A stretch of 64,000 bases of DNA from Auanema rhodensis (GCA_964057225.1 OZ059897.1:14322001-14386000); one strand, 5' to 3'. Counted from the stretch's first letter, positions 2,254-46,691 are shown. Notes: a model not told the origin generated them from the sequence alone. Translations and numbers: made by a program.

Positions 2254-3582
2254 TTAGTCAGTTTTGTGAATGTTTTGTGGTTGCTCGACCATTACGCATG
2301 TTGGATCATCACAAGGTAGCGTTTCAGGCTTCAGTATACGGTAACCCTAAACAAAATGGTACCATTATATGTGAATTAGAAATAATTTTACTTTATGACT
2401 AGTCCATAATTGTAAGGGTGTATAAAATGTCGTGTTCATTTTTTCTGAAGCTATTAATCGAAGTCGAGCAAACATAGGATTGTTAACTTCGGAAACACCT
2501 TGAATGAGCATAAGTATATGTATTAATCCATGAATTGCTACCTGATACCCAATCCCAATCCTTTTTGCTCCAATCTGTTTGATTGAAGAAAGCTCGTGCA
2601 TTTCTTTCCGCAAGTTGTGCTGCATACTGTTTCGCTACATTGTCGAACTGATTCTTTTCTTCGTCCTTATACAATTCAACAAAGTTTCTTTGTACAAGAG
2701 TATACTTATCACACATTCTAGTGAGGCAAAGAACTTAAAAAAAAATTATTTTCAAAGCAAATGTCTGAATTACTGCAGAGGGCTGACAATCCTACAACTA
2801 TAACTAAAAACCAAGCAAAGATCTGCGATTCTGCTTCTAAATAAGATCCATCATGGCCATCTAGTTTACATATACACTCTGGACAGTACTCAAAACAGAT
2901 TTTGATATTTATATTGAGAAATTATCATAAATACCTTTCCATCTCCACTCATTTTTTCGTAACTTAAGCTTTCTTTATAATATGCCATCACAGTATCATT
3001 TCTACAAAACTTTGAAGTATTCATATCGCAGAAGCCATGTGCAAGTAAACATCTGTAGTACCTGTTAATGGAAATTTAGCGTTTTTCTCCTAAATTCTTC
3101 ACAAAAATACCCTCCATCTAATAAAACTACAAAGAGCCAAGCAGTTGGTGCAATAGAAGATTGAACGATTAATTCTATCCAATGAACTAACACTGTCTTC
3201 CAACTATGTCTAGTATCAGGGGCTCTGAGAAAATAAATGATTATGAAAGGTTTAGTAAATATAATTTACCTGAAACAACATCCATGTGTTAATTTCCATG
3301 TTGTTGTATTTATCATTATTCCTATTATAAGTAAAGCAACTGTTGGTCCAAACATAAATACAATTGAATGATAAATATTCAATGGATAAGCACATGGACA
3401 AGCAAACGTTAATTTACGAATTAACTATAACAATATACTAAAATATTTGAATAGTTGATATACATTTTTACAGATTGTCCTCCAATTGTGGAAACTATTA
3501 AAATAGCGTTGAGTAGAGTGGGACCATGATTTGAAAATACGCTTTGAAATACGTTTGCTATAGCATGTCCAGGAGCCGCCAT
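2254..3582 (-). CDS. clhm-1: Calcium homeostasis modulator (CALHM) large-pore channel
   Basis: Spliced product MAAPGHAIANVFQSVFSNHGPTLLNAILIVSTIGGQS...KLTFACPCAYPLNIYHSIVFMFGPT...MCDKYTLVQRNFVELYK...FFNQTDWSKKDWDWVSG...NNPMFARLRLIA...YTPLQLW...GYRILKP...HKTD*. Closely matches recalled C. elegans CLHM-1. Confidence 0.93.
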
Positions 3583-3747
3583 TAAATAGCGTTGTAATTA
3601 TACTAATTATCTGTGAATATATTATAAAGTATTCCGTTAAAGAAAAAATTATATAAAGAAAAAAGTAGTTTTTACAAGGAATAACTAAAATTATTTTGAA
3701 GCTATAGTGAAAATCGAACGCACAGTGACATGATCTAGATGTTTTTC

Positions 3748-4054: not shown

Positions 4055-6723
4055 TCAATGATATTTGAATTTATGAACAAGATATTTAGATTTTTTAGTA
4101 AAATGTGTACCTAACATAGATACTAAAGATAAAAACATTAACATGAAGCATAATACACAATTACTTGGAACATCAGATGGATCATAACTATCAGAATAGA
4201 GTTCATCCATATATGAAGCACTTTGATTCCACCTGAAAATAATTTTATTTTCAATACAAAATAAATAAATAAACCCTACCGGCAAAATTGAGATGCTGCT
4301 ATAGAGTCAATATCATTACGTTCAGTTCGAGAACAATGAATTATTGGTAATCGACTAATAATATTTGAAATAAAAAAATAATTTGAATATCGATATGGTG
4401 AGAGATATGTAAAATAATTGAACCAAGTAGGTGACATGGTTACAAAAGATCTGAATAATATTTTAAAAAATAAATAATTTTAAATTATAAATTACCGTAA
4501 ATGTCCACCAGCACCAATTAATAAAAAAGTGTCAATAGTTATTACAAATCCTATAGCTGTTAAATTATTTTTAATTAAAATCATTGCAATCATAGTAATA
4601 TATTGAAAAAAGAAACATATAAATAAAATTAATATAAAAGATTGAAATATAAGCCATTCATCAGATATATTACACATCCTAAAGTTAAATGTTATTCGTA
4701 ATATTATTAATTTAACTTATTTACCAAAATATAATAAATGTTGATATTGCAATCTCAATTATATATATTGGAGTAAATATTAATAAATGAGATATAGCTG
4801 AAATCATCTGGCTATAAAGCCGTTCAGAGGATTCAAAATATGATAAATCACGAATATCTCGATCTGAAAAAAATACTTAATTAATTGCTTTCAAGTTACA
4901 TTACTGCTTACAATTTATATTTGTCAAAAATATTATAACTATGGATAATATAAAAACAGAAATTTCTAAAAAACCAATAGAAGAATGCGGAACCGTCCAT
5001 GATCCAGCTAACATGTTCACACTGTTCATACTATTGGTACATAATGAGTATAAGAATTTAAAAACCTGAATAAGGACAGAAATACTGCTGCTAAAGGAAA
5101 CACGGATATAAGAAGAAGAAACCGTACTAAATCCGTTATTAATCTATGCAAACTTCGACTGAAAATACATTTTCCATTTAATTAAAACTTTTAAGTTTTT
5201 TACCGGCATAATATAAATAATTTAAGAATTGTTGTTGGTTGTGTCAGATAACATAAAGCTGATGGTGAAGAAAAGGTAATTGCTGAATCTGTATTATCAG
5301 GACGAATTGTATTTGATCTATATTCCTGTAAAATAATTATTAAGGAATATTGATTACTTTATTGATACTTTAAGATAATTGACCAACAACATAGCCTGTT
5401 CCTGAGTTTCATCACAACGTGTAGCTGTTTCTCTATCAATAGTAGCTATGGTAACTGAACAAAGTTGTTTTTCAGAACAATTGTTTTCCCTTACTGTAAT
5501 AAGCAGCTGGGTTTTCATTACTTGGACATGGAAATCCCGCCTTCTTGAAGTATGCCGGCAAATTTTTAGTATAACCTAAATGAGTATTTTAATAAATATT
5601 TAATTAAAAATCAAATATATACCACTATAAAATACTTCACCATAAAATAATATAGTAATTGTGGTTATTAATTGATATATGTCTGATCTTGGGCTTTGAA
5701 TACTTATAAAAATAATTCTATTATGTAGTCGAGCATAACTTTGTAAACAGTTCATAAGTTGAAAAGCTGATAATGCTTCAATATCTTTACAAGGATCATC
5801 AAGTATGAGTAGAACTAGAATTATTCAATTAGTAACTTTAATCAAACTATTCGAATGCAAAAACCTGGATCTTTTGCTGCAGCTAGAGCAATAAGAACTC
5901 TTCTTCTTGCACTTTCAGATAATTTGAAAAGTTTCGTGTATGCATAAGAAGATATTTCAAATTCTCTCATTAATTGAACTGTCTAAATAATTTAAAATAT
6001 AAGTATATATTAAATAATTTTATTATTATTATTATTATTTAAAAAATTGTAATTTTAAAAATAAAGTTCGATATACCCGTTGTTCTATATCTGATTCCGT
6101 TAGTGATCCCCCAAGGCATAGCTTTAAATTATAATATAACAGATTTCGAACTGTTAATTTTGAAGGATAGTTTGAATAGAAATTGACAAATGATCCAATT
6201 TGGCAAAATCGAGATTCTGAAAAGAAAAAGTAATTAATAGAAAGATGGCTTATATTATGACGATGAATACATTATATCTGTAACAACTGTCATGAATATT
6301 ATTAAATCGTTCTTATTCATAACCATTTCTATTTTAGAAAATAGAAATATGATAAACTATACTTGTTAAAAGAGTTTGATTTAAGTACACGGAACCAGAA
6401 GTATCACCATCGGCACTGTTAGCTACTACCTTCAGAAGGGTTGATTTGCCGCTTCCTTGAAAAATCAGACGATATCAATGCTTATCCACATGTTTTACCT
6501 GATACACCACAAACTGCATGTATTTCTCCAGATTTCGCTTCCAAATTGACATCATTCAAGAATTGAGCAATAACAGGAGGGCTGTAAATACGTGAGAACC
6601 TGAAAAAACATTATTGAAATGAATATATAGTATTGTAAAAAACCATTTATCTCCGGCAACTGTACTCATGAAAGAAATGTTTCTACATTCTAAAATATTT
6701 TTATTTTCTTCTAAACCTTCCAT
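4055..6723 (-). CDS. abch-1: ABCG-type half transporter (NBD-TMD), ABCG5-like; probable abch-1 orthologue
   Basis: MEGLEENKNILECRNISF...FLNDVNLEAKSGEIHAVCGVSGSGKSTLL (Walker A spans an intron)...LSESARRRVLIALAAAKDPVLLILDDP...NRIIFISIQSPRSDIYQL...YFKKAGFPCPSNENPAAYY, then hydrophobic TM exons; stop at 4055. The symbol is from recall and less certain than the family. Confidence 0.8.
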
Positions 6724-6923
6724 ATAGGTAAATTTGAATAAAAAATTCTAAAATAAAATATTTAAAAAGAAGAAATTTATTACAAAAAATGAAATTAATA
6801 TTTTGTTCAAGAAATGGAGAGTAATAAGAGAAGAAATACTATATTTAGCCTTCAGATACTGAGTAGTCGGTTAATTATCTTCAGGAAGTCAATAAGTCTT
6901 CATTATTTGAAAATAACCTCAGA

Positions 6924-6984
6924 CTACCTTGAAGGTAAAGAATATTGACCAGATGGAGAGGGTTGACTGTATGACCTTTGCCAT
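6924..6984. promoter_or_regulatory. Candidate nuclear-receptor sites in the bidirectional spacer (DR1/HNF4-type and NR5A-like)
   Basis: TGACCTTTGCCAT at 6972-6984 (ATGGCA-A-AGGTCA on -); TCAAGGTAG on - at 6924-6932; GATA site TTATCT at 6875-6880. Confidence 0.35.
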
Positions 6985-7119
6985 GAGACTTTTACAGTAA
7001 ATGAAAAACAATTTTTACAGTTGCTATAGATGAATGATGGTTTTCTTATATTATTTTATTTAAAATTTGTCTATATTTTAATATTTTAGTTAAATTACCA
7101 TAGCTCAAGACTTTATACA

Positions 7120-10100
7120 ATGTTATCTCCAATAAATCAAGAATACAAGCATGGATTAAGAAGAAATTATTTAGAAAATAATGATATATATGCAAATGAT
7201 TTTATAATGGAAGGAAATGTAAGTTATTTCTTCAATTTTTCAAACAATTTGTATAACTTTCGCAAATTTTTTGTTTTATACATACAAAAGGCTTTGAGAG
7301 AAAAGGAAATACATGAATATAACATGCTATGACTGAAGAACGATAAAGGTAAGAAGGTGAAGAAGTCAGAGGAGTAGAGAGGATGAGGGTAGTTAAGACA
7401 TGAACTGGATATAATTGTGAAAGCGAATCCAACAAATTGTGCTGGACTGTGATCCGGTTTTCCGATTCTTTTGAATAGTGTGTAGTAGGGTAATTCGTTG
7501 TTCTGTTGGAACTTCTTGACTTTGAATCACCTCTCGTTTTATTTGACTCTTCAATCTCAGTTTACCTTATTTTGGCAAAAAGCTTCTCATTTTTGTGTCT
7601 TAGTTTCGTTCTTGTTCATTTTATGTTGGTATTATGTTATTCAAGAGATAATACTATGATTTTTGCAAATATTTTTATTTTTATGTTATTTCACCAATGT
7701 ATTTTCGATTTTTCTTTCCAGAAGAACTCATGCTCTGGTGCAAGTAGTATGAATTCCAAAAAGTTGTCTGTTCTTGAATGTTCAGAAGATTACTTACCGT
7801 GTGGATATCCACGTAATGCAGGTTTGATTGAAACAGTTCAAGCTTATATTTCATTTGTAATACTTTGATTAGGTTCGTCATCACAGCAGGACAGATTAAC
7901 AGAACCAGAATTAGTATCAAAATGGAAGAAGAAAAATACAAATCCATTTGATATGAAGTTAGTTAATAATATCTTTCATATCAATTTTCATGTCTATTTT
8001 TATAAATTTTGAAGCTCTCCCGCTAGAGGCGAATTGAGTGTTTTCACTGAAGAAACTGATACAGTTTTTGCTGATGATGAAAGGTTAGTAGAGTATAAAA
8101 GATGAAAAAGACTATTCAATTCATATAAAATACAAATTCAATGTGTCAGAAGATTATATATTCCAGAAACTCAGGATTTCTAGTTCCTTTACGACATCAA
8201 GGTCATTACTTTTCGAACCTAGATTTCTTTACAAGTAGTGGATATAATTATCTGAAATATGCAAAATATTCAGAATTATCTAAATCAAATAGAACGTACG
8301 ATTTTTCATATTTCAACTATAAAATAAATAAAAAGTAAATCATTTAGTAATTCTCCACATTTATCAATATCTCATCTATCGTTTTCAATGGATACTCGAA
8401 CTCGTATAGATCGTTGGTTATGGCGTGTTCCAAAAATAATTCATTCACTGAATAATATTAGTATGGAATTAGTTTCTGGAGATATTATGGCACTTCTTTA
8501 CACAACAGGTTTCTAAGTTTTTCTTCTTTTTGAAATTTTGTTCTAAGCTTGCAATCTTTTAAGAAGCCAGTGAAGTTTTTTTTAGAACAAGAAGTAAAAA
8601 CATTGTTGAGAATCATTGCCGGTGATACTATACCAAATGGAAAAATAAGTGGTGAATTCATGATAAATGGCCATAGAATTAAATCACATAACTTAAAAGG
8701 AAGAATTGGTAAATAGGTTTACAATTAAAGTTTTTAATTTGATATAGCTTTCATAAGAGAAGATGATCTTCCGGAATATTTAACAGTATATCAATATCTT
8801 CAATTATATACATCTTATTATGGAACAGAAGCTGCAAATAACTGCAAATCATTCAATATGGTTAATATTGAAATGAAATTTAGAATTAATCGATATTGAT
8901 ATATAGATTGATCAACTTGTTGTAACTCTGGCACTAACTCATTTCAAGAATGTTTTATGTAGCGAATTAACTAAATCAGAAAAACGTAGAGTTCAAATTG
9001 CTTGTCAAATTCTATGTGATACAGGTAAATATTATTTTGGAAATATAATTAAATACATATTTTAGATATTCTTGTTTGTGATAATATAACTGGTGATATG
9101 GATGTGTATGATTCTGCTTTTGTAATTGATTTCCTACGAGATTGGGCTTTGAAGCTTAATAGAATTGTTATCATGTCAATTGCTCCATGTTCTATGGGTG
9201 TATTAGAAATGTTTTCACAAGGTTTAAACCTAATTAATCAATTCAAACATTATTTTGAATATTTACAGTGTCAATATTAGCTTCAGGACAATTAATATAC
9301 TTTGGTACACCATCTAATTTCATTCCATATTTTGAATCAATTAACTTTCCTTGTCCACCATTCAAAAATCCTTGTGATTATTATGGTTAATTTTAATTAT
9401 ATAAAATATATTAAAACATATATTTCAGTTGATTTAGCCACACATGACCACTTAACAGTAGAAGCATCAAAAGATTCATCTCAACGAATAGATATATTAT
9501 GTTCAAAATGGAAACAACATGGAATGACTCATGTGCCTGTAACTATATCAACATTACCGAATAAATTAGAAAATGTTGATATTGTGACGTCATCAATAAT
9601 TCTTTACAAGTTAGTTTATATTCTCTTTATATTCTTTTTTAATTTTAATTTTCAGACGATATTGTAAAGAAATGTTTAATAAGCCTTTACTTCATTTACA
9701 GCCATGTATTTGTACTCTTTTCATTTCACTTATCATTGGATTTATATTTTTTCAATTATCAAATCAAAAACGATCGGAAATAGATGATCGTTTGGGATTA
9801 ATTACAACTATAATGTATTTTATTTTATTTCCATTATGTATTTTATGGATAAAACAAGGTAACTCTTTATATAATTTTTAGTTAAAATCTTTCACTTAGC
9901 CCATATTTTTCGAAAGAAAGCAAGAATTGATGCAAGAAGTGGTTTTTACTCTTCTATTACTTATTCTATAGTTACGGTACGTATTTGAATATTTTTGTTT
10001 TTACAATTTTAAAACTTTTTTTCAGATATCATTCCTTTTACCATTATTTATAACTCAAATATTGTTTTTTGTCACACCATTGTATCTATTATCAGGTAAA

Positions 10101-10915
10101 TTTACCTTTGATGAGAGTATCTGAACAATTTTTCATTAAATGAGCAAAAAAACTTAAAAAATGGTAAATAAATAGAAATAATTTCAGGAATAACTATGTT
10201 AAATGGAACTGACTACTCATTCATCTCATTTTTTCTAATCATCTTTTTATATTTTGGACTTGTTTATTCCATTTGTTTCTTTCTCAGTCATTTCTTGAAA
10301 TCGCCAATCGCTTCACTTGTTATAACATGTAAGTAACTGATTGTCTATTTGAGGTCTCACTAATGAATATCATTTCAGATCTGTTTATATCCATTTTTCA
10401 TCTTTCAAGTGGTCTTTCTGTTGTATCTGCAGATTTTCCTGCTAGTCTGACTGCTTTTCGCTTATTTTCTCCTGGTTATTGGACATCATATTTCTTACTT
10501 CATCAAGCATTTCTCGGTAATTCTATTAACTATTTACATAGAAATATAATAATATTATAGGATCATCAGTTGTTAGTTCTTTAATACAAAATACAGCTGC
10601 TGTTAATTTCACAGAAATTGTATTTTCTTGTGAACGTAAAAAGATTTTAGCTAAACGAATAGATGAAGTATAAAATTATTTTAAATATTTTTAACATTCA
10701 TATACTATCAGGTGCCAATATATACGATCTCAACATGCTCAAAATTCCGATCGGATCATTTAATGGCATTTTACGGTTTTGAAGGCAGATTTTTATATGA
10801 AAATTATTCAGCTACCCACTTTGTGTCATTTGGAATCATTGTAATCATCATATGGATTGCAATTTTTTCCATTTTTTTCTGTTGTTCCAACCGAAAAAAA
10901 AGTAAAATCAAATGA
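7120..10915 (+). CDS. abcx-1: Degenerate ABCG-type half transporter with long N-terminal extension, ABCG8-like; probable abcx-1 orthologue
   Basis: Exons give PHLSISHLSF...LNNISMELVSGDIMALLYTTEQEVKTLLRIIAG...SGEFMING...ELTKSEKRRVQIACQILCDTDILVCDNITGDMDVYDSAFVIDFLRDWA...NRIVIMSI...FPCPPFKNPCDYYVDLAT...DDRLGL, then TM exons; stop at 10915. The start is uncertain (possible extra exon from ~6953). Confidence 0.78.
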
Positions 10916-11169
10916 AATTTTTTAATATAAATTGTAATAATTCTATTTTATGTTATAATAAATGTTTTTTTTTGATTTAAATATAAAAAAAATAATTTAT
11001 TCAAGAAATCATTTATTTATAAAGAATGTAAAACATTCCATTTAATAACACATTATATCATACATTCGGTCTTTTGAAGTATAATAGACCCGATATCATT
11101 TTGACTGTAACTGTGTAAACCCTGAACAACTCATATACATATTAATACATTCAATTTTATAAAATAAAT

Positions 11170-14100
11170 TTAAAATCTTTCGATTATCACCGCATTTCGA
11201 TGAGTTGAAGCTCTTTCCATTTCTGATGCTCCTAGTGGAAATTTTTTACGTTTGACTGGAGCTTGTTTAGCCATAACATCTGATTCAAGATCTTGTGAAC
11301 CTCTATATGATAATAAATAAACTTTTATATATATTTTACTAATATATAATATACCTGGGATCTGATGATTGACTTTCTAAATCTTGATGATGATGAGAAT
11401 CTCGACTATGTATCATGATATCAGAATCGGGACCCGATGATAGTGTACCATCATTATCTTGCATTTGAGACATTTGTCTCAGCCATTGATTTGTTTTACC
11501 TTATTTATACATATAAAGCTTCAAATTATTATAAATAACATACTGTTAGGGGTTAACTGATTTTCTTTATCATCAGTACTTGCTGTACTTGGATCACTTC
11601 GACTTTGTGATTTAACCATGTTCATAATTCTTTGTCGACTACTGATGAAAGAACTATAAATATATAAAATATTAAAATATTTCGTATAATTAACTATACC
11701 GGCTATTATATGCACTAGCATTATCTGGTAAGCAACATACTCCAGTTCGTATCCATCGAACAATTACTAATCGAACTTTATCATTCATTACAACATGAAG
11801 GAAAAATATAAAAATTCCCTTAAACAAAATAATTTATTATTTAAATAAATATAATGATCATGATAAGTTACCTGAGTACTGTTAAGAATTGTGAAAATCC
11901 AAGCAAATGCTGTACCAGTTCCTCCTTTTACAGCCGTCAAAAAGCCAAATACCCATGTAATTCCTAATAAGCAGAGAAGTGTTGCAGAACCCTGAATCAT
12001 ATTAGTATTTTCTAAAATTTATTTTATCAAATAACCTTAAGCCATCCTAATAATCGGTCTGCCTTGTTTCTATCACGACTACGAACTGATAGAACAACAC
12101 GAAGAGCAATTAATAAGAAAATGATATTTGCCTGAATATTCGATTTATAAATTGGTAAAAATAGGAAAAAAATACAATGATAACTATGATTATTGGTGCG
12201 ATGAAGGCCCAAATGGTAGGTGTTGTCGTATCAATCCAACAACTATAATCATACTTTGAACTTATTGAAACTTTGTTTGAACTAACTAGCTATCAGTTCC
12301 ATAGTTTTGCCAGGCTACACCTGCAGAAACAGCTACAACAACGGCCGAGAACCCATAAGAGAATAGGTAGTAAAGTAAAACATGACTTTTGTTTGATTCA
12401 AAAACCTAAAATAAATGAAAGTTTCTAGTTGATTGTTATTGAAATAATCATTTTTACTTGAATTAACATAAGGTAAAGTTGATATCCTTCTAATAACATC
12501 CAACAGAAAGATGATAAAAAGAAGAAATGAAGTAATAAGGCTACAACTGAACAAGCTGTTTTATTTGATGTTCGATCCATTCCAATCACAAATACAAGCT
12601 CAGCAATCAAGAGGCAAAGACATAAATTCCTATGAATTGTATTTCGAACGTTGTATAGAGAACTAAAAAATTTAAATAAAATACATTCAAATTATTTTTA
12701 TTTTACCGGAAAAATGTGAATGTTGCTAGAGATAGGACCAAACATACAATGGAAATTGAGCATCCAATTATGGAAACAACATCCAATGCTGATGATAAAG
12801 CTCCCGAGTAACGAGAAACTTTTCCACTGACATCCATAAGAATAGCAAAACTTAATTTTATTTTGCAAATTCAAAACTTTTCTTGAATGTTATACCTGGT
12901 TAAGTGATTACAGGCACATTGAGAAGCTGTTTCATTTGTTGAAATTAACTGACATCCTTCTGTATTCCATGTTCTGAAATAAAATTTGTTAATAAGCTCT
13001 ACTTTTAAAGAAATGTTCTACTTCATATTTAAATCCCAGAAAACACATCTTGGATTGCTAACTCCATTTTTTCTGATATGATAGAAGGTGAATGTTACGG
13101 GTTCAGTTTCAGGCAGACTGAAAAAAAATAGGAAAAGCATTAAAACATTATAAATTCTGATAATTCACCTAATGGAACGAGTAGCATCATCTACTGATGC
13201 TCCAATTATATGACTGTTAATCAATGTATTATCATCTGTTGCTAGAATATCAGCAAATGTTGTGAATACATAATAGCCTAGACGTAGACGTGTTCTATCT
13301 AATGATCCAACAGGCTAAAATTAAAAATAGTTATGCTTTACTTCAGATTATTTCATACTGCTGAACCCCCAGGATGGAAAAATGCTTGACTTGCTATGTC
13401 ACCAAGCGGCGGAGGTGGTGCAGCTGATTCTTCTTAAAACAGTTATTGAAGTATCATTGTGATAAGGATAAAACTTACTCAACGTACTGAAAGAAGGCAA
13501 TGATATTGTCGGAGATTTTCGGATTGAAGAGAATTCAACAGTTGAAGTTTCTTGAACATCTAGTTGACTTCTGAATCATGTGATGGTTTATTGAAAACAA
13601 AAACTTCAAAAAAAGCTGACCTTGAACCAGAGAGTTCGATCGTATCATCCATTGGGACAGGCCCTGATAGAGGATCAACCCGAGCGTTAGAGTAGGCTTC
13701 AGGTTCCTTAACATCAATTTCCATTGCTGAATTAAGAAATTTGCTAAAAGAAGAGAAATGTATATGATATACCCCAATGTTTATAATTAATAGTTCTCTG
13801 TGACTGAATTGTATAATCTGCTAATAATAAAGCACTTTGCTCTAAAACATTCATAAGCCTATGTAAGAAAAATAATTAGTTGAAATACAAAAATAAGTGA
13901 AATTACTTCGAAGCATGATCAATTCTTTTCCATGATTCTAGCTCTTCCCATACAGGGATAGCTGTTGCTGATAACAATTCATCTCCTGATGCTCCAAGTG
14001 ACTGAAATTTGAAATCAGAGATTAATCTTTCTTCCGCTACAGATAGGTATAGCAGATATGCTTTGGAATGTTACATACTTCAGTGAAGTTTGATGCTCGT

Positions 14101-39698: not shown

Positions 39699-46691
<6,993 letters not shown>

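What the first reader, a model, noticed from the sequence alone, without database searches (positions are those of the whole stretch)
5680..9190. Both composite ATPase sites of the ABC pair look dead: candidate pseudo-transporter or sensor
Seen, left gene: Walker A GVSGSGKST is intact, but the signature is LSESA (not LSGGE), Walker B is LLILDD (catalytic E to D) and the H-switch is ISIQSP (H to Q). Seen, right gene: Walker A reads LYTTEQEVKT, signature LTKSE, Walker B ILVCDN (E to N), H-switch MSIAP. Established: human G5/G8 retains one competent site (G5 Walker A/B plus G8 signature). Here even that site has lost E, H and the signature glycines, yet both reading frames appear intact. Inference: the pair may bind but not hydrolyse ATP, and could act as a facilitator (even an importer), channel regulator or sensor.
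Basis: partly seen in the sequence, partly recalled or inferred. Interest (0 to 1): 0.72.

Follow-up and report, generated by a model that had tools for sequence, protein, structure and literature searches.

The report
Nematode ABCG5/G8 pair lacking consensus ATPase sites
Two head-to-head genes encode the nematode counterparts of the sterol pump ABCG5/ABCG8; both are intact, expressed and conserved, yet neither ATP site has the residues that normally split ATP, so the pair probably binds ATP without being driven by its hydrolysis.

Summary
I built both gene models: left gene on the minus strand, 15 exons, 628 aa; right gene on the plus strand, 19 exons, about 796 aa. Spliced RNA contigs from four runs confirm the exon junctions that were listed, so alternative splicing does not restore canonical motifs.

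The left gene is the nematode ABCG5 orthologue, the family named abch-1 in Caenorhabditis. The right gene is its ABCG8-like partner. The head-to-head pair is present in all six other nematode species whose loci I fetched.

The degeneracy is old and conserved, not decay:
- No nematode ABCG5 orthologue (0 of 15) keeps the H-loop histidine or the Q-loop glutamine, and 11 of 15 have Asp in place of the catalytic Glu.
- The partner's Walker A is replaced by a conserved LYT-x-E-x-E motif.
- dN/dS between C. briggsae and C. nigoni is 0.04 for abch-1 and 0.06 for the partner's ATP-binding domain.
- Arthropod and tardigrade ABCG5 also lack the histidine (0 of 24), whereas vertebrates and lophotrochozoans are fully canonical.

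"Dead" remains an inference. One site cannot bind ATP. The other looks like a classical degenerate site that binds ATP and hydrolyses it very slowly. The scan's other note on this stretch (s1-384028) agrees on the ABCG5/G8 identity.

The parts
4055..6723 (-). Left gene: ABCG5 orthologue (nematode abch-1 family), 15 exons, 628 aa, with the ATP-binding domain first and the membrane domain second
   Evidence: Gene model. Ten junctions confirmed by spliced RNA contigs. Its Walker B to H-loop exon hits human ABCG5 best (1.2e-6). It nests inside the nematode ABCG5/abch-1 clade.
7120..10915 (+). Right gene: ABCG8-like partner, 19 exons, about 796 aa. Exon 1 (7120-7218) is unsupported; an alternative start ATG lies at 7749.
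   Evidence: Gene model. Junctions confirmed. The exon at 9657-9857 hits Pfam ABC2_membrane (3.4e-5). Orthologues lie head-to-head with abch-1 orthologues in six other species.
6724..7721 (.). Shared divergent upstream region between the two genes (397 bases to the modelled right start, 998 to the first RNA-covered right exon)
   Evidence: No RNA contig depth between about 6750 and 7550. The same head-to-head layout is seen in L001-L007.
6439..6508 (-). Left Walker A GVSGSGKST, intact, split by the intron at 6456-6498
   Evidence: Junction 6455/6499 is seen in RNA. Lys and Ser/Thr are kept in 12 of 13 nematode orthologues with that column.
5908..5922 (-). Left signature LSESA in place of LSGGE/Q
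   Evidence: Nematode orthologues read LSESA, LTESA or LSVSA.
5690..5812 (-). Left Walker B LLILDD (catalytic Glu replaced by Asp), D-loop KDIE, H-loop SIQSP (His replaced by Gln)
   Evidence: Alignment to human ABCG5 (MLFDEP...TIHQPRS). Census of orthologues.
8496..8602 (+). Right pseudo-Walker A LYTTEQEVKT, with no P-loop glycines and no Lys-Ser/Thr pair, split by the intron at 8509-8585
   Evidence: Junction seen in RNA contig X1 record 3. The LYT-x-E-x-E motif is conserved in Caenorhabditis, Steinernema, Halicephalobus and Pristionchus.
8967..9190 (+). Right signature LTKSE, pseudo-Walker B ILVCDN, D-loop GDMD, H-loop position SIAPC
   Evidence: Orthologues read L-x-x-[ST]-[EQ], with variable Walker B residues (ISD, CKD, CDN, TEN) and Pro at the H-loop position.
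8192..8266 (+). Conserved N-terminal motif RHxxHYFSN...NYLKYAK, specific to the right-gene family
   Evidence: tblastn hits in five other nematode species. Its function is unknown.

Best explanation
The two genes are the nematode orthologues of ABCG5 (left, the abch-1 family) and ABCG8 (right). They keep the ancestral head-to-head arrangement and most likely still form an obligate heterodimer in a membrane.

Their ATP-binding domains keep the fold but not the chemistry:
- **Site 1** (right Walker A position plus left signature) has no P-loop. It cannot bind nucleotide and serves as a fixed structural contact.
- **Site 2** (left Walker A, Walker B Asp-Asp, H-loop Gln, right signature LTKSE) has the make-up of a classical degenerate site. 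It should bind Mg-ATP and hold it, hydrolysing very slowly or not at all.

The pair is therefore most likely an ATP-binding but not hydrolysis-driven ABCG5/G8 complex. Possible roles are a nucleotide-gated lipid or sterol facilitator or a regulator.

Shown: identity, splicing, expression, motif states, conservation and purifying selection. Inferred: heterodimer formation, ATP binding without turnover, and any sterol role.
For: **Motifs and splicing.**

**Orthology of the left gene.**
- The closest solved structure for its Walker B to H-loop exon is human ABCG5.
- For its P. mayeri orthologue the ranking is ABCG5 2e-46 > ABCG8 3e-31 > ABCG1 > ABCG2.
- Named relatives are CBR-ABCH-1, and 'ABCG5' of Ascaris, Toxocara and Haemonchus.
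- The gene tree follows the species tree: nematode clade support 100, Ecdysozoa 99.

**Orthology of the right gene.**
- The membrane domain of its Halicephalobus orthologue hits only ABCG8 (1e-7).
- That orthologue's ATP-binding domain hits ABCG5 and ABCG8 first.

**Conserved pairing.** The genes lie head-to-head in Pristionchus, three Caenorhabditis species, Steinernema and Halicephalobus.

**Selection.** Omega is 0.039 for abch-1 and 0.06 (95% interval 0.02-0.11) for the partner's ATP-binding domain. Wrong-frame controls give 0.8-2.2.

**ATP binding at site 2.** The Walker A Lys and Ser/Thr are retained in the left family.

**Literature.** Glu-to-Asp sites bind ATP but hydrolyse far slower than a transport cycle (PMC7756269).
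Against: - No biochemistry was done. Asp at the catalytic position can support residual ATPase; ABCB1 with both Glu changed to Asp keeps residual activity.
- Four nematode orthologues (Ascaris, Toxocara, Acrobeloides and one other) keep Asp-Glu. The Glu loss is therefore not universal, and some lineages may still hydrolyse ATP.
- The right gene's assignment to ABCG8 rests on orthologues, synteny and a weak membrane-domain hit. No tree with ABCG8, ABCG1 or ABCG2 sequences was made.
- Selection was measured in Caenorhabditis, not in the window's species.
- Heterodimer formation was not tested.
Confidence: 0.55

Rival explanations
1. The pair is still a primary active transporter. Site 2 hydrolyses ATP slowly but sufficiently, with Asp as the general base and Gln replacing His, and drives sterol or lipid export as in mammals.
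For: - The Walker A and the Walker B Asp are intact and conserved.
- Some nematode orthologues keep the catalytic Glu.
- Glu-to-Asp sites retain slow hydrolysis (PMC7756269).
- Strong purifying selection acts on both ATP-binding domains.
Against: - The same site lacks the Q-loop Gln, the H-loop His, the catalytic Glu and both signature glycines. In human G5/G8, introducing degenerate-site residues into the active site inactivates transport (PMC7756502).
- The partner's signature is not conserved among nematodes (LTKSE, LNRSQ, LGPSE, LGRTE, LSWTE). That variation is unexpected for a catalytic contact.
Confidence: 0.3
2. Each subunit works with a different, canonical ABCG (WHT) half-transporter rather than with its neighbour, so a consensus site is supplied in trans.
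For: ABCG half-transporters can form different dimers.
Against: - The head-to-head linkage of exactly these two genes is kept in every nematode locus fetched, as for obligate G5/G8 partners.
- A consensus site needs Walker A, Walker B and H-loop from one subunit and a signature from the other. Both window proteins are defective in both halves, so no partner could complete a site with them.
Confidence: 0.1
3. The genes are decaying pseudogenes, or the odd motifs are artefacts of wrong exon choice.
For: Pfam does not detect an ABC_tran domain in the single exons or in the partner's orthologues.
Against: - There are 34 exons with open frames and GT-AG introns.
- Spliced transcripts occur in four runs.
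- The motifs are conserved across nematode clades III-V.
- Omega is 0.04-0.06 in Caenorhabditis.
Confidence: 0.02

Closest known systems
Human ABCG5/ABCG8 (sterolin-1/2) heterodimer
   Same: - Reverse-topology half-transporters encoded head-to-head.
- They are the best solved relatives of both nematode families.
- The asymmetry runs the same way: the G8-side Walker A and the G5-side signature are degenerate (PMC7756502).
   Different: - Human G5 keeps the Q-loop Gln, catalytic Glu and H-loop His, and G8 keeps a consensus signature, which gives one active site.
- Here those residues are Phe/Asn, Asp, Gln and LTKSE, and the G8-side P-loop is gone entirely.
- The substrate in nematodes is unknown.
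C. elegans / C. briggsae abch-1 and 'ABCG5' of Ascaris, Toxocara and Haemonchus
   Same: - They belong to the same orthologous family as the left gene.
- They carry the same degenerate motifs.
- They have the same divergent neighbour.
   Different: - Identity to the window protein is only 32-40%.
- The papers found treat abch-1 only as an expression marker.
- One survey states that C. elegans has no ABCG5/8 orthologues (PMC3724490).
- From memory, unverified: Sheps et al. 2004 placed C56E6.1 and C56E6.5 in a separate 'subfamily H'.
Degenerate nucleotide-binding site of heterodimeric ABC exporters (TAP1/2, MRP1, TM287/288, BmrCD)
   Same: Site 2 has the textbook pattern: intact Walker A, Walker B Glu replaced by Asp, a non-His H-loop residue, and a non-consensus signature from the partner.
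   Different: Those transporters always pair the degenerate site with a consensus site that powers transport. Here the second site is not consensus either; it has lost its P-loop.
Arthropod and tardigrade ABCG5 orthologues
   Same: - They form the sister clade in the tree.
- They also lack the H-loop His (0 of 24), the Q-loop Gln (2 of 24) and the signature glycines.
   Different: - They mostly keep the catalytic Glu (21 of 24).
- They have Arg or Lys instead of Ser/Thr after the Walker A Lys.
- I could not obtain their ABCG8 partners.

Membership tests
ABCG5/ABCG8 sterolin pair | ABCG architecture: ATP-binding domain at the N-terminus, followed by an ABC-2 type membrane domain | tested here: met
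   - The left and right models align over the ATP-binding domain.
- ABC2_membrane hits the right exon at 9657-9857 and the Halicephalobus orthologue's membrane domain (5.6e-15).
- ABC_tran hits the left orthologues.
ABCG5/ABCG8 sterolin pair | Closest relatives are ABCG5 (one subunit) and ABCG8 (the other), not ABCG1, ABCG2 or ABCG4 | tested here: inconclusive
   - The left family is clearly ABCG5.
- The right family's membrane domain hits only ABCG8, but its ATP-binding domain scores slightly higher to G5 than to G8.
- No tree with G8, G1 or G2 references could be built, because no such sequences were retrieved.
ABCG5/ABCG8 sterolin pair | Head-to-head gene arrangement with a short shared upstream region | tested here: met
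   Seen in the window (6723 versus 7120) and in six other nematode species. The same layout is reported for human, Drosophila, Daphnia and Tetranychus (PMC3724490).
ABCG5/ABCG8 sterolin pair | One consensus ATP site: G5 Walker A, Walker B and H-loop plus the G8 signature | tested here: not met
   Walker B is Asp-Asp, the H-loop residue is Gln, the Q-loop Gln is absent and the partner signature is LTKSE.
ABCG5/ABCG8 sterolin pair | Obligate heterodimer that exports neutral sterols | not testable with these tools
   No interaction or transport data are available.
Nematode abch-1 family | Groups with named ABCH-1/ABCG5 proteins of nematodes to the exclusion of other animals | tested here: met
   - The nematode clade has SH-aLRT support of 100.
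- The window protein nests with Haemonchus, Diploscapter and Caenorhabditis (support 96).
- A CALHM gene lies downstream in the window, in P. mayeri and in C. auriculariae.
Classical degenerate-plus-consensus ABC heterodimer | A degenerate site paired with a hydrolysis-competent consensus site | tested here: not met
   Site 2 fits the degenerate pattern, but site 1 lacks the P-loop and the left signature is LSESA, so there is no consensus site.
Pseudogene | Broken frames, no or aberrant transcripts, and neutral evolution | tested here: not met
   Frames are open, RNA is spliced, and omega is 0.04-0.06 in Caenorhabditis orthologues.

The most novel reading that the evidence does not exclude
ABCG5 lost its H-loop histidine, Q-loop glutamine and signature glycines at the base of Ecdysozoa, the animals that cannot make sterols. 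Nematodes then went further and removed every hydrolysis-competent ATP site from the ABCG5/G8 pair.

On this reading the complex changed from an ATP-driven sterol exporter into something else that selection has kept for hundreds of millions of years. It could be an ATP-gated or ATP-independent device for sterol uptake, retention or sensing.

The conserved acidic LYT-x-E-x-E motif would then fill the empty phosphate pocket of site 1 and lock that interface shut.
Probability: 0.25. Interest if true: 0.85.

Novelty: new variant of a known kind. Interest (0 to 1): 0.62.

Why it matters
ABC transporters are defined by ATP hydrolysis, and even the atypical members (CFTR, SUR, TAP, human G5/G8) keep one consensus site. 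This pair has none, yet it is expressed, conserved across nematode clades III-V and under strong purifying selection. That makes it a natural test of what an ABC membrane complex can do with ATP binding alone, or without ATP.

The result also corrects a published statement that Caenorhabditis lacks ABCG5/8 orthologues. abch-1 and its divergent neighbour fill that place. C. elegans genetics therefore becomes available for studying this system in a sterol-auxotrophic animal.

The census further shows that ABCG5 is non-canonical in all sampled arthropods and tardigrades. This bears on how insects and parasites handle dietary sterols.

Tried and rejected
- **Single exons against Pfam.** Only one membrane exon matched, and the ATP-binding domain exons are too short and divergent.
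- **Right-gene exons against solved structures.** Nothing meaningful came back, so I switched to long exons of the Halicephalobus orthologue.
- **Loose end in run X3 at 7701.** Its 30 printed letters have no match in the window. It stays unexplained.
- **Arthropod or tardigrade ABCG8 via neighbours of ABCG5.** No record was found for Panonychus. Varroa's gene lies at a contig end. Hypsibius, Sarcoptes and Pediculus have no ABC gene within the flank.
- **Sheps et al. 2004.** The paper is not held, and a supplement search for wht-9/C56E6 was uninformative. The C. elegans name of the right-gene orthologue was therefore not established.
- **Third word search, seeded with Capitella P0115.** It returned only ABCG5 proteins and no ABCG8.
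- **First dN/dS mapping.** It was too strict and mapped only 118 codons; I redid it.
- **Rejected readings.** Pseudogene, splice artefact, and a species-specific oddity.
Full report
**What is at the locus.**

The window is AT-rich (about 22-40% G+C). It carries two divergently transcribed genes with introns of roughly 35-150 bases. I assembled both gene models from the three-frame translations.
- The left gene runs on the minus strand from 6723 to 4055. It has 15 exons and encodes 628 aa.
- The right gene runs on the plus strand from 7120 to 10915. It has 19 exons and encodes 796 aa.
- All introns are GT-AG and both frames are open.

BLASTP of one model against the other aligns their N-terminal ATP-binding domains (NBDs) at E = 3e-25 and 25% identity. 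This puts each motif of one protein opposite the same motif of the other.

**The observation.**

- Left gene: Walker A GVSGSGKST, signature LSESA, Walker B LLILDD, H-loop SIQSP.
- Right gene: LYTTEQEVKT at the Walker A position, signature LTKSE, Walker B ILVCDN, H-loop position SIAPC.

**Is the splicing right?**

The look-up of sequencing runs returned four runs of one 2019 study. Their contigs, laid on 4950-10920, are spliced, so they derive from RNA.
- They show all ten left-gene junctions across the NBD.
- They show right-gene junctions 7821/7873, 8508/8586 (the one inside the pseudo-Walker A), 9221/9269, 9385/9429, 10328/10379 and 10516/10561.
- They corrected one acceptor of mine: left exon 11 begins at 5021.
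- Three right-gene junctions (8708/8748, 8860/8907, 9024/9066) were not among the printed rows. They fit the contig lengths and depths.
- No contig covers 6750-7550, so right exon 1 is unsupported and the protein may start at the ATG at 7749.

Both genes are therefore transcribed and spliced as modelled. No alternative splice restores canonical motifs.

**What the genes are.**

Because a joined model has no reference, I searched exon by exon.

*Left gene.*
- Its Walker B to H-loop exon hits human ABCG5 best among solved structures (1.2e-6), then ABCG8.
- The same exon, searched against 1.84 billion representative proteins, found 27 proteins at E < 1e-10.
- Their names show a nematode family: CBR-ABCH-1 of C. 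briggsae, and 'ABCG5' of Ascaris suum, Toxocara canis and Haemonchus contortus. Members also come from Pristionchus, Steinernema, Halicephalobus, Panagrolaimus, Bursaphelenchus, Diploscapter and filariae.
- The closest non-nematode proteins are tardigrade and arachnid ABCG5.
- The full-length P. mayeri orthologue ranks human ABCG5 (2e-46) above ABCG8 (3e-31), ABCG1 and ABCG2.
- A tree of 61 ABCG5 orthologues, rooted on the right gene, reproduces the species tree. Vertebrates group with lophotrochozoans against Ecdysozoa (support 99). Nematodes are monophyletic (100). The window protein nests with Haemonchus, Diploscapter and Caenorhabditis (96).

*Right gene.*
- I fetched loci around the left-gene orthologues.
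- In P. mayeri, C. briggsae, C. nigoni, C. auriculariae, S. carpocapsae and Halicephalobus, tblastn with the right-gene model finds its orthologue upstream on the opposite strand.
- Annotation pipelines split or fuse these genes, and the precomputed Pfam hits listed for them show no ABC_tran.
- A long exon of the Halicephalobus orthologue covering the NBD still matches human ABCG5 (3.7e-21) and ABCG8 (1.2e-16) over the whole domain.
- Its membrane half matches only ABCG8 (1e-7) and Pfam ABC2_membrane.
- A CALHM gene downstream of the left gene is syntenic in P. mayeri and C. auriculariae.

I conclude that the pair is the nematode ABCG5/ABCG8 pair. A published survey stated that C. elegans orthologues of ABCG5/8 could not be identified (PMC3724490). 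The C. briggsae locus shows that abch-1 and its neighbour fill that place.

**How old and how constrained the degeneracy is.**

*Left (ABCG5) family*.
- The Walker A Lys and Ser/Thr are kept.
- The signature reads LSESA-like.
- The catalytic Glu is Asp in 11 of 15 members.
- The H-loop His is absent in 15 of 15; it is mostly Arg and is Gln in the window.
- The Q-loop Gln is absent in 15 of 15.

*Right (ABCG8-like) family*.
- The P-loop is replaced by a conserved [AV]L[LM]YT-x-E-x-E motif.
- The signature is L-x-x-[ST]-[EQ].
- The Walker B acidic pair is not conserved (CDN, ISD, CKD, TEN).
- The H-loop position is followed by Pro.
- The segment after the D-loop (D-x-Y-D-x-x-F-x-I-D-F-L-R-D-W-A) is strongly conserved.

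*Selection, C. briggsae against C. nigoni.*
- dN/dS is 0.039 for abch-1 over 276 codons.
- dN/dS is 0.06 (bootstrap 95% interval 0.02-0.11) over 321 codons of the partner's NBD region.
- Wrong-frame controls in the same DNA give 0.8-2.2.

This is conservation of a derived state, not decay.

*Wider census*.

| Group | n | H-loop His | Q-loop Gln | Signature | Walker A Ser/Thr | Walker B Glu |
|---|---|---|---|---|---|---|
| Vertebrates | 10 | 10 | 10 | two Gly in 9 of 10 | 10 | 10 |
| Lophotrochozoans | 12 | 12 | 12 | two Gly in 12 | 12 | 12 |
| Arthropods + tardigrades | 24 | 0 | 2 | two Gly in 0 | 0 (mostly Arg/Lys) | 21 |
| Nematodes | 15 | 0 | 0 | two Gly in 0 | 12 of 13 | 4 |

The non-canonical ABCG5 NBD therefore dates to the ecdysozoan stem or close to it. 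Nematodes added the Glu-to-Asp change. I could not obtain arthropod ABCG8 sequences, so I cannot say whether arthropods keep a consensus site.

**Mechanism.**

In an ABC dimer, each ATP is bound between the Walker A, Walker B and H-loop of one subunit and the signature of the other.
- **Site 1** here (right Walker A position plus left signature) has no glycine-rich loop, no Lys-Ser/Thr pair and no conserved acidic pair. Nucleotide binding is very unlikely. This extends the human state, where the same site is the inactive one (PMC7756502).
- **Site 2** (left Walker A, Asp-Asp, Gln, plus the right signature LTKSE) reproduces the substitutions of the degenerate sites of TAP1- or MRP1-type exporters. 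The review PMC7756269 reports that Glu-to-Asp sites still bind ATP and hydrolyse it, but much more slowly than a transport cycle. It also reports that ABCB1 with both Glu changed to Asp has only residual ATPase.

My best reading (confidence 0.55) is an ATP-binding complex that is not driven by hydrolysis. The main rival (0.3) is a slow but genuine ATPase. Pairing with other ABCG proteins (0.1) would not create a consensus site. The pseudogene or artefact reading (0.02) is excluded for the family.

**Novelty and limits.**

The genes are annotated in other nematodes, and abch-1 is a named gene. The papers I found use it only as an expression marker. I found no paper describing the loss of all consensus sites or the ecdysozoan-wide pattern, but the library is incomplete and Sheps et al. 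2004 was not available. I classify the finding as a new variant of a known kind.

Limits:
- No biochemistry.
- No tree with ABCG8, ABCG1 or ABCG2 references.
- Selection was measured in Caenorhabditis only.
- The right gene's start is uncertain.

Noticed in passing
window 2400-3700, minus strand: A CALHM-like (calcium homeostasis modulator) gene lies just downstream of the left gene. Ca_hom_mod genes sit in the same position in P. mayeri (L001) and C. auriculariae (L005), so the block is syntenic.
   Followed up: partly
window 11200-13000, minus strand: ORF pieces resemble an adhesion/secretin-type 7TM receptor (latrophilin-like) downstream of the right gene. This was read from translations only.
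   Followed up: no
window 45235-45306, minus strand: A tRNA-Gln (TTG) gene. It is the only Rfam match at the gathering threshold in the window.
   Followed up: no
window 7701: A contig of run X3 carries 255 letters that do not lie on 4950-10920, joined 21 bases upstream of the exon-2 acceptor. The 30 letters printed for it have no match in the window. It could be a distant 5' exon or a chimeric contig. No RNA covers the modelled exon 1 (7120-7218).
   Followed up: partly
window 8192-8266; L002, L004-L007 upstream genes: The right-gene family has a conserved N-terminal motif, RHxxHYFSN...G(F/Y)NYLKYAK, ahead of the ATP-binding domain. It is weaker in C. briggsae and C. nigoni. Its function is unknown.
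   Followed up: partly
proteins P0067, P0171-P0281 (arthropods, tardigrades): All 24 sampled arthropod and tardigrade ABCG5 orthologues lack the H-loop His (mostly Glu), and all have a non-Ser/Thr residue (mostly Arg or Lys) after the Walker A Lys. Vertebrate and lophotrochozoan ABCG5 are canonical.
   Followed up: partly
L003 2024-9381; L006 5605-9090; L007 1419-9643: Public annotations mis-model the ABCG8-like gene. It is fused to UTP20 in C. briggsae AF16, split in two in S. carpocapsae, and fused to a Cys_rich_FGFR protein in Halicephalobus.
   Followed up: no
window 6008-6048: An (ATT)n-type simple repeat lies inside left intron 4. Read laying skipped it as a repeat.
   Followed up: no
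vertebrate ABCG5 proteins P0317-P0413: Nine of ten non-mammalian vertebrate ABCG5 sequences sampled have a consensus SGGE signature. The ISTGE signature described for human ABCG5 may therefore be a later change.
   Followed up: no
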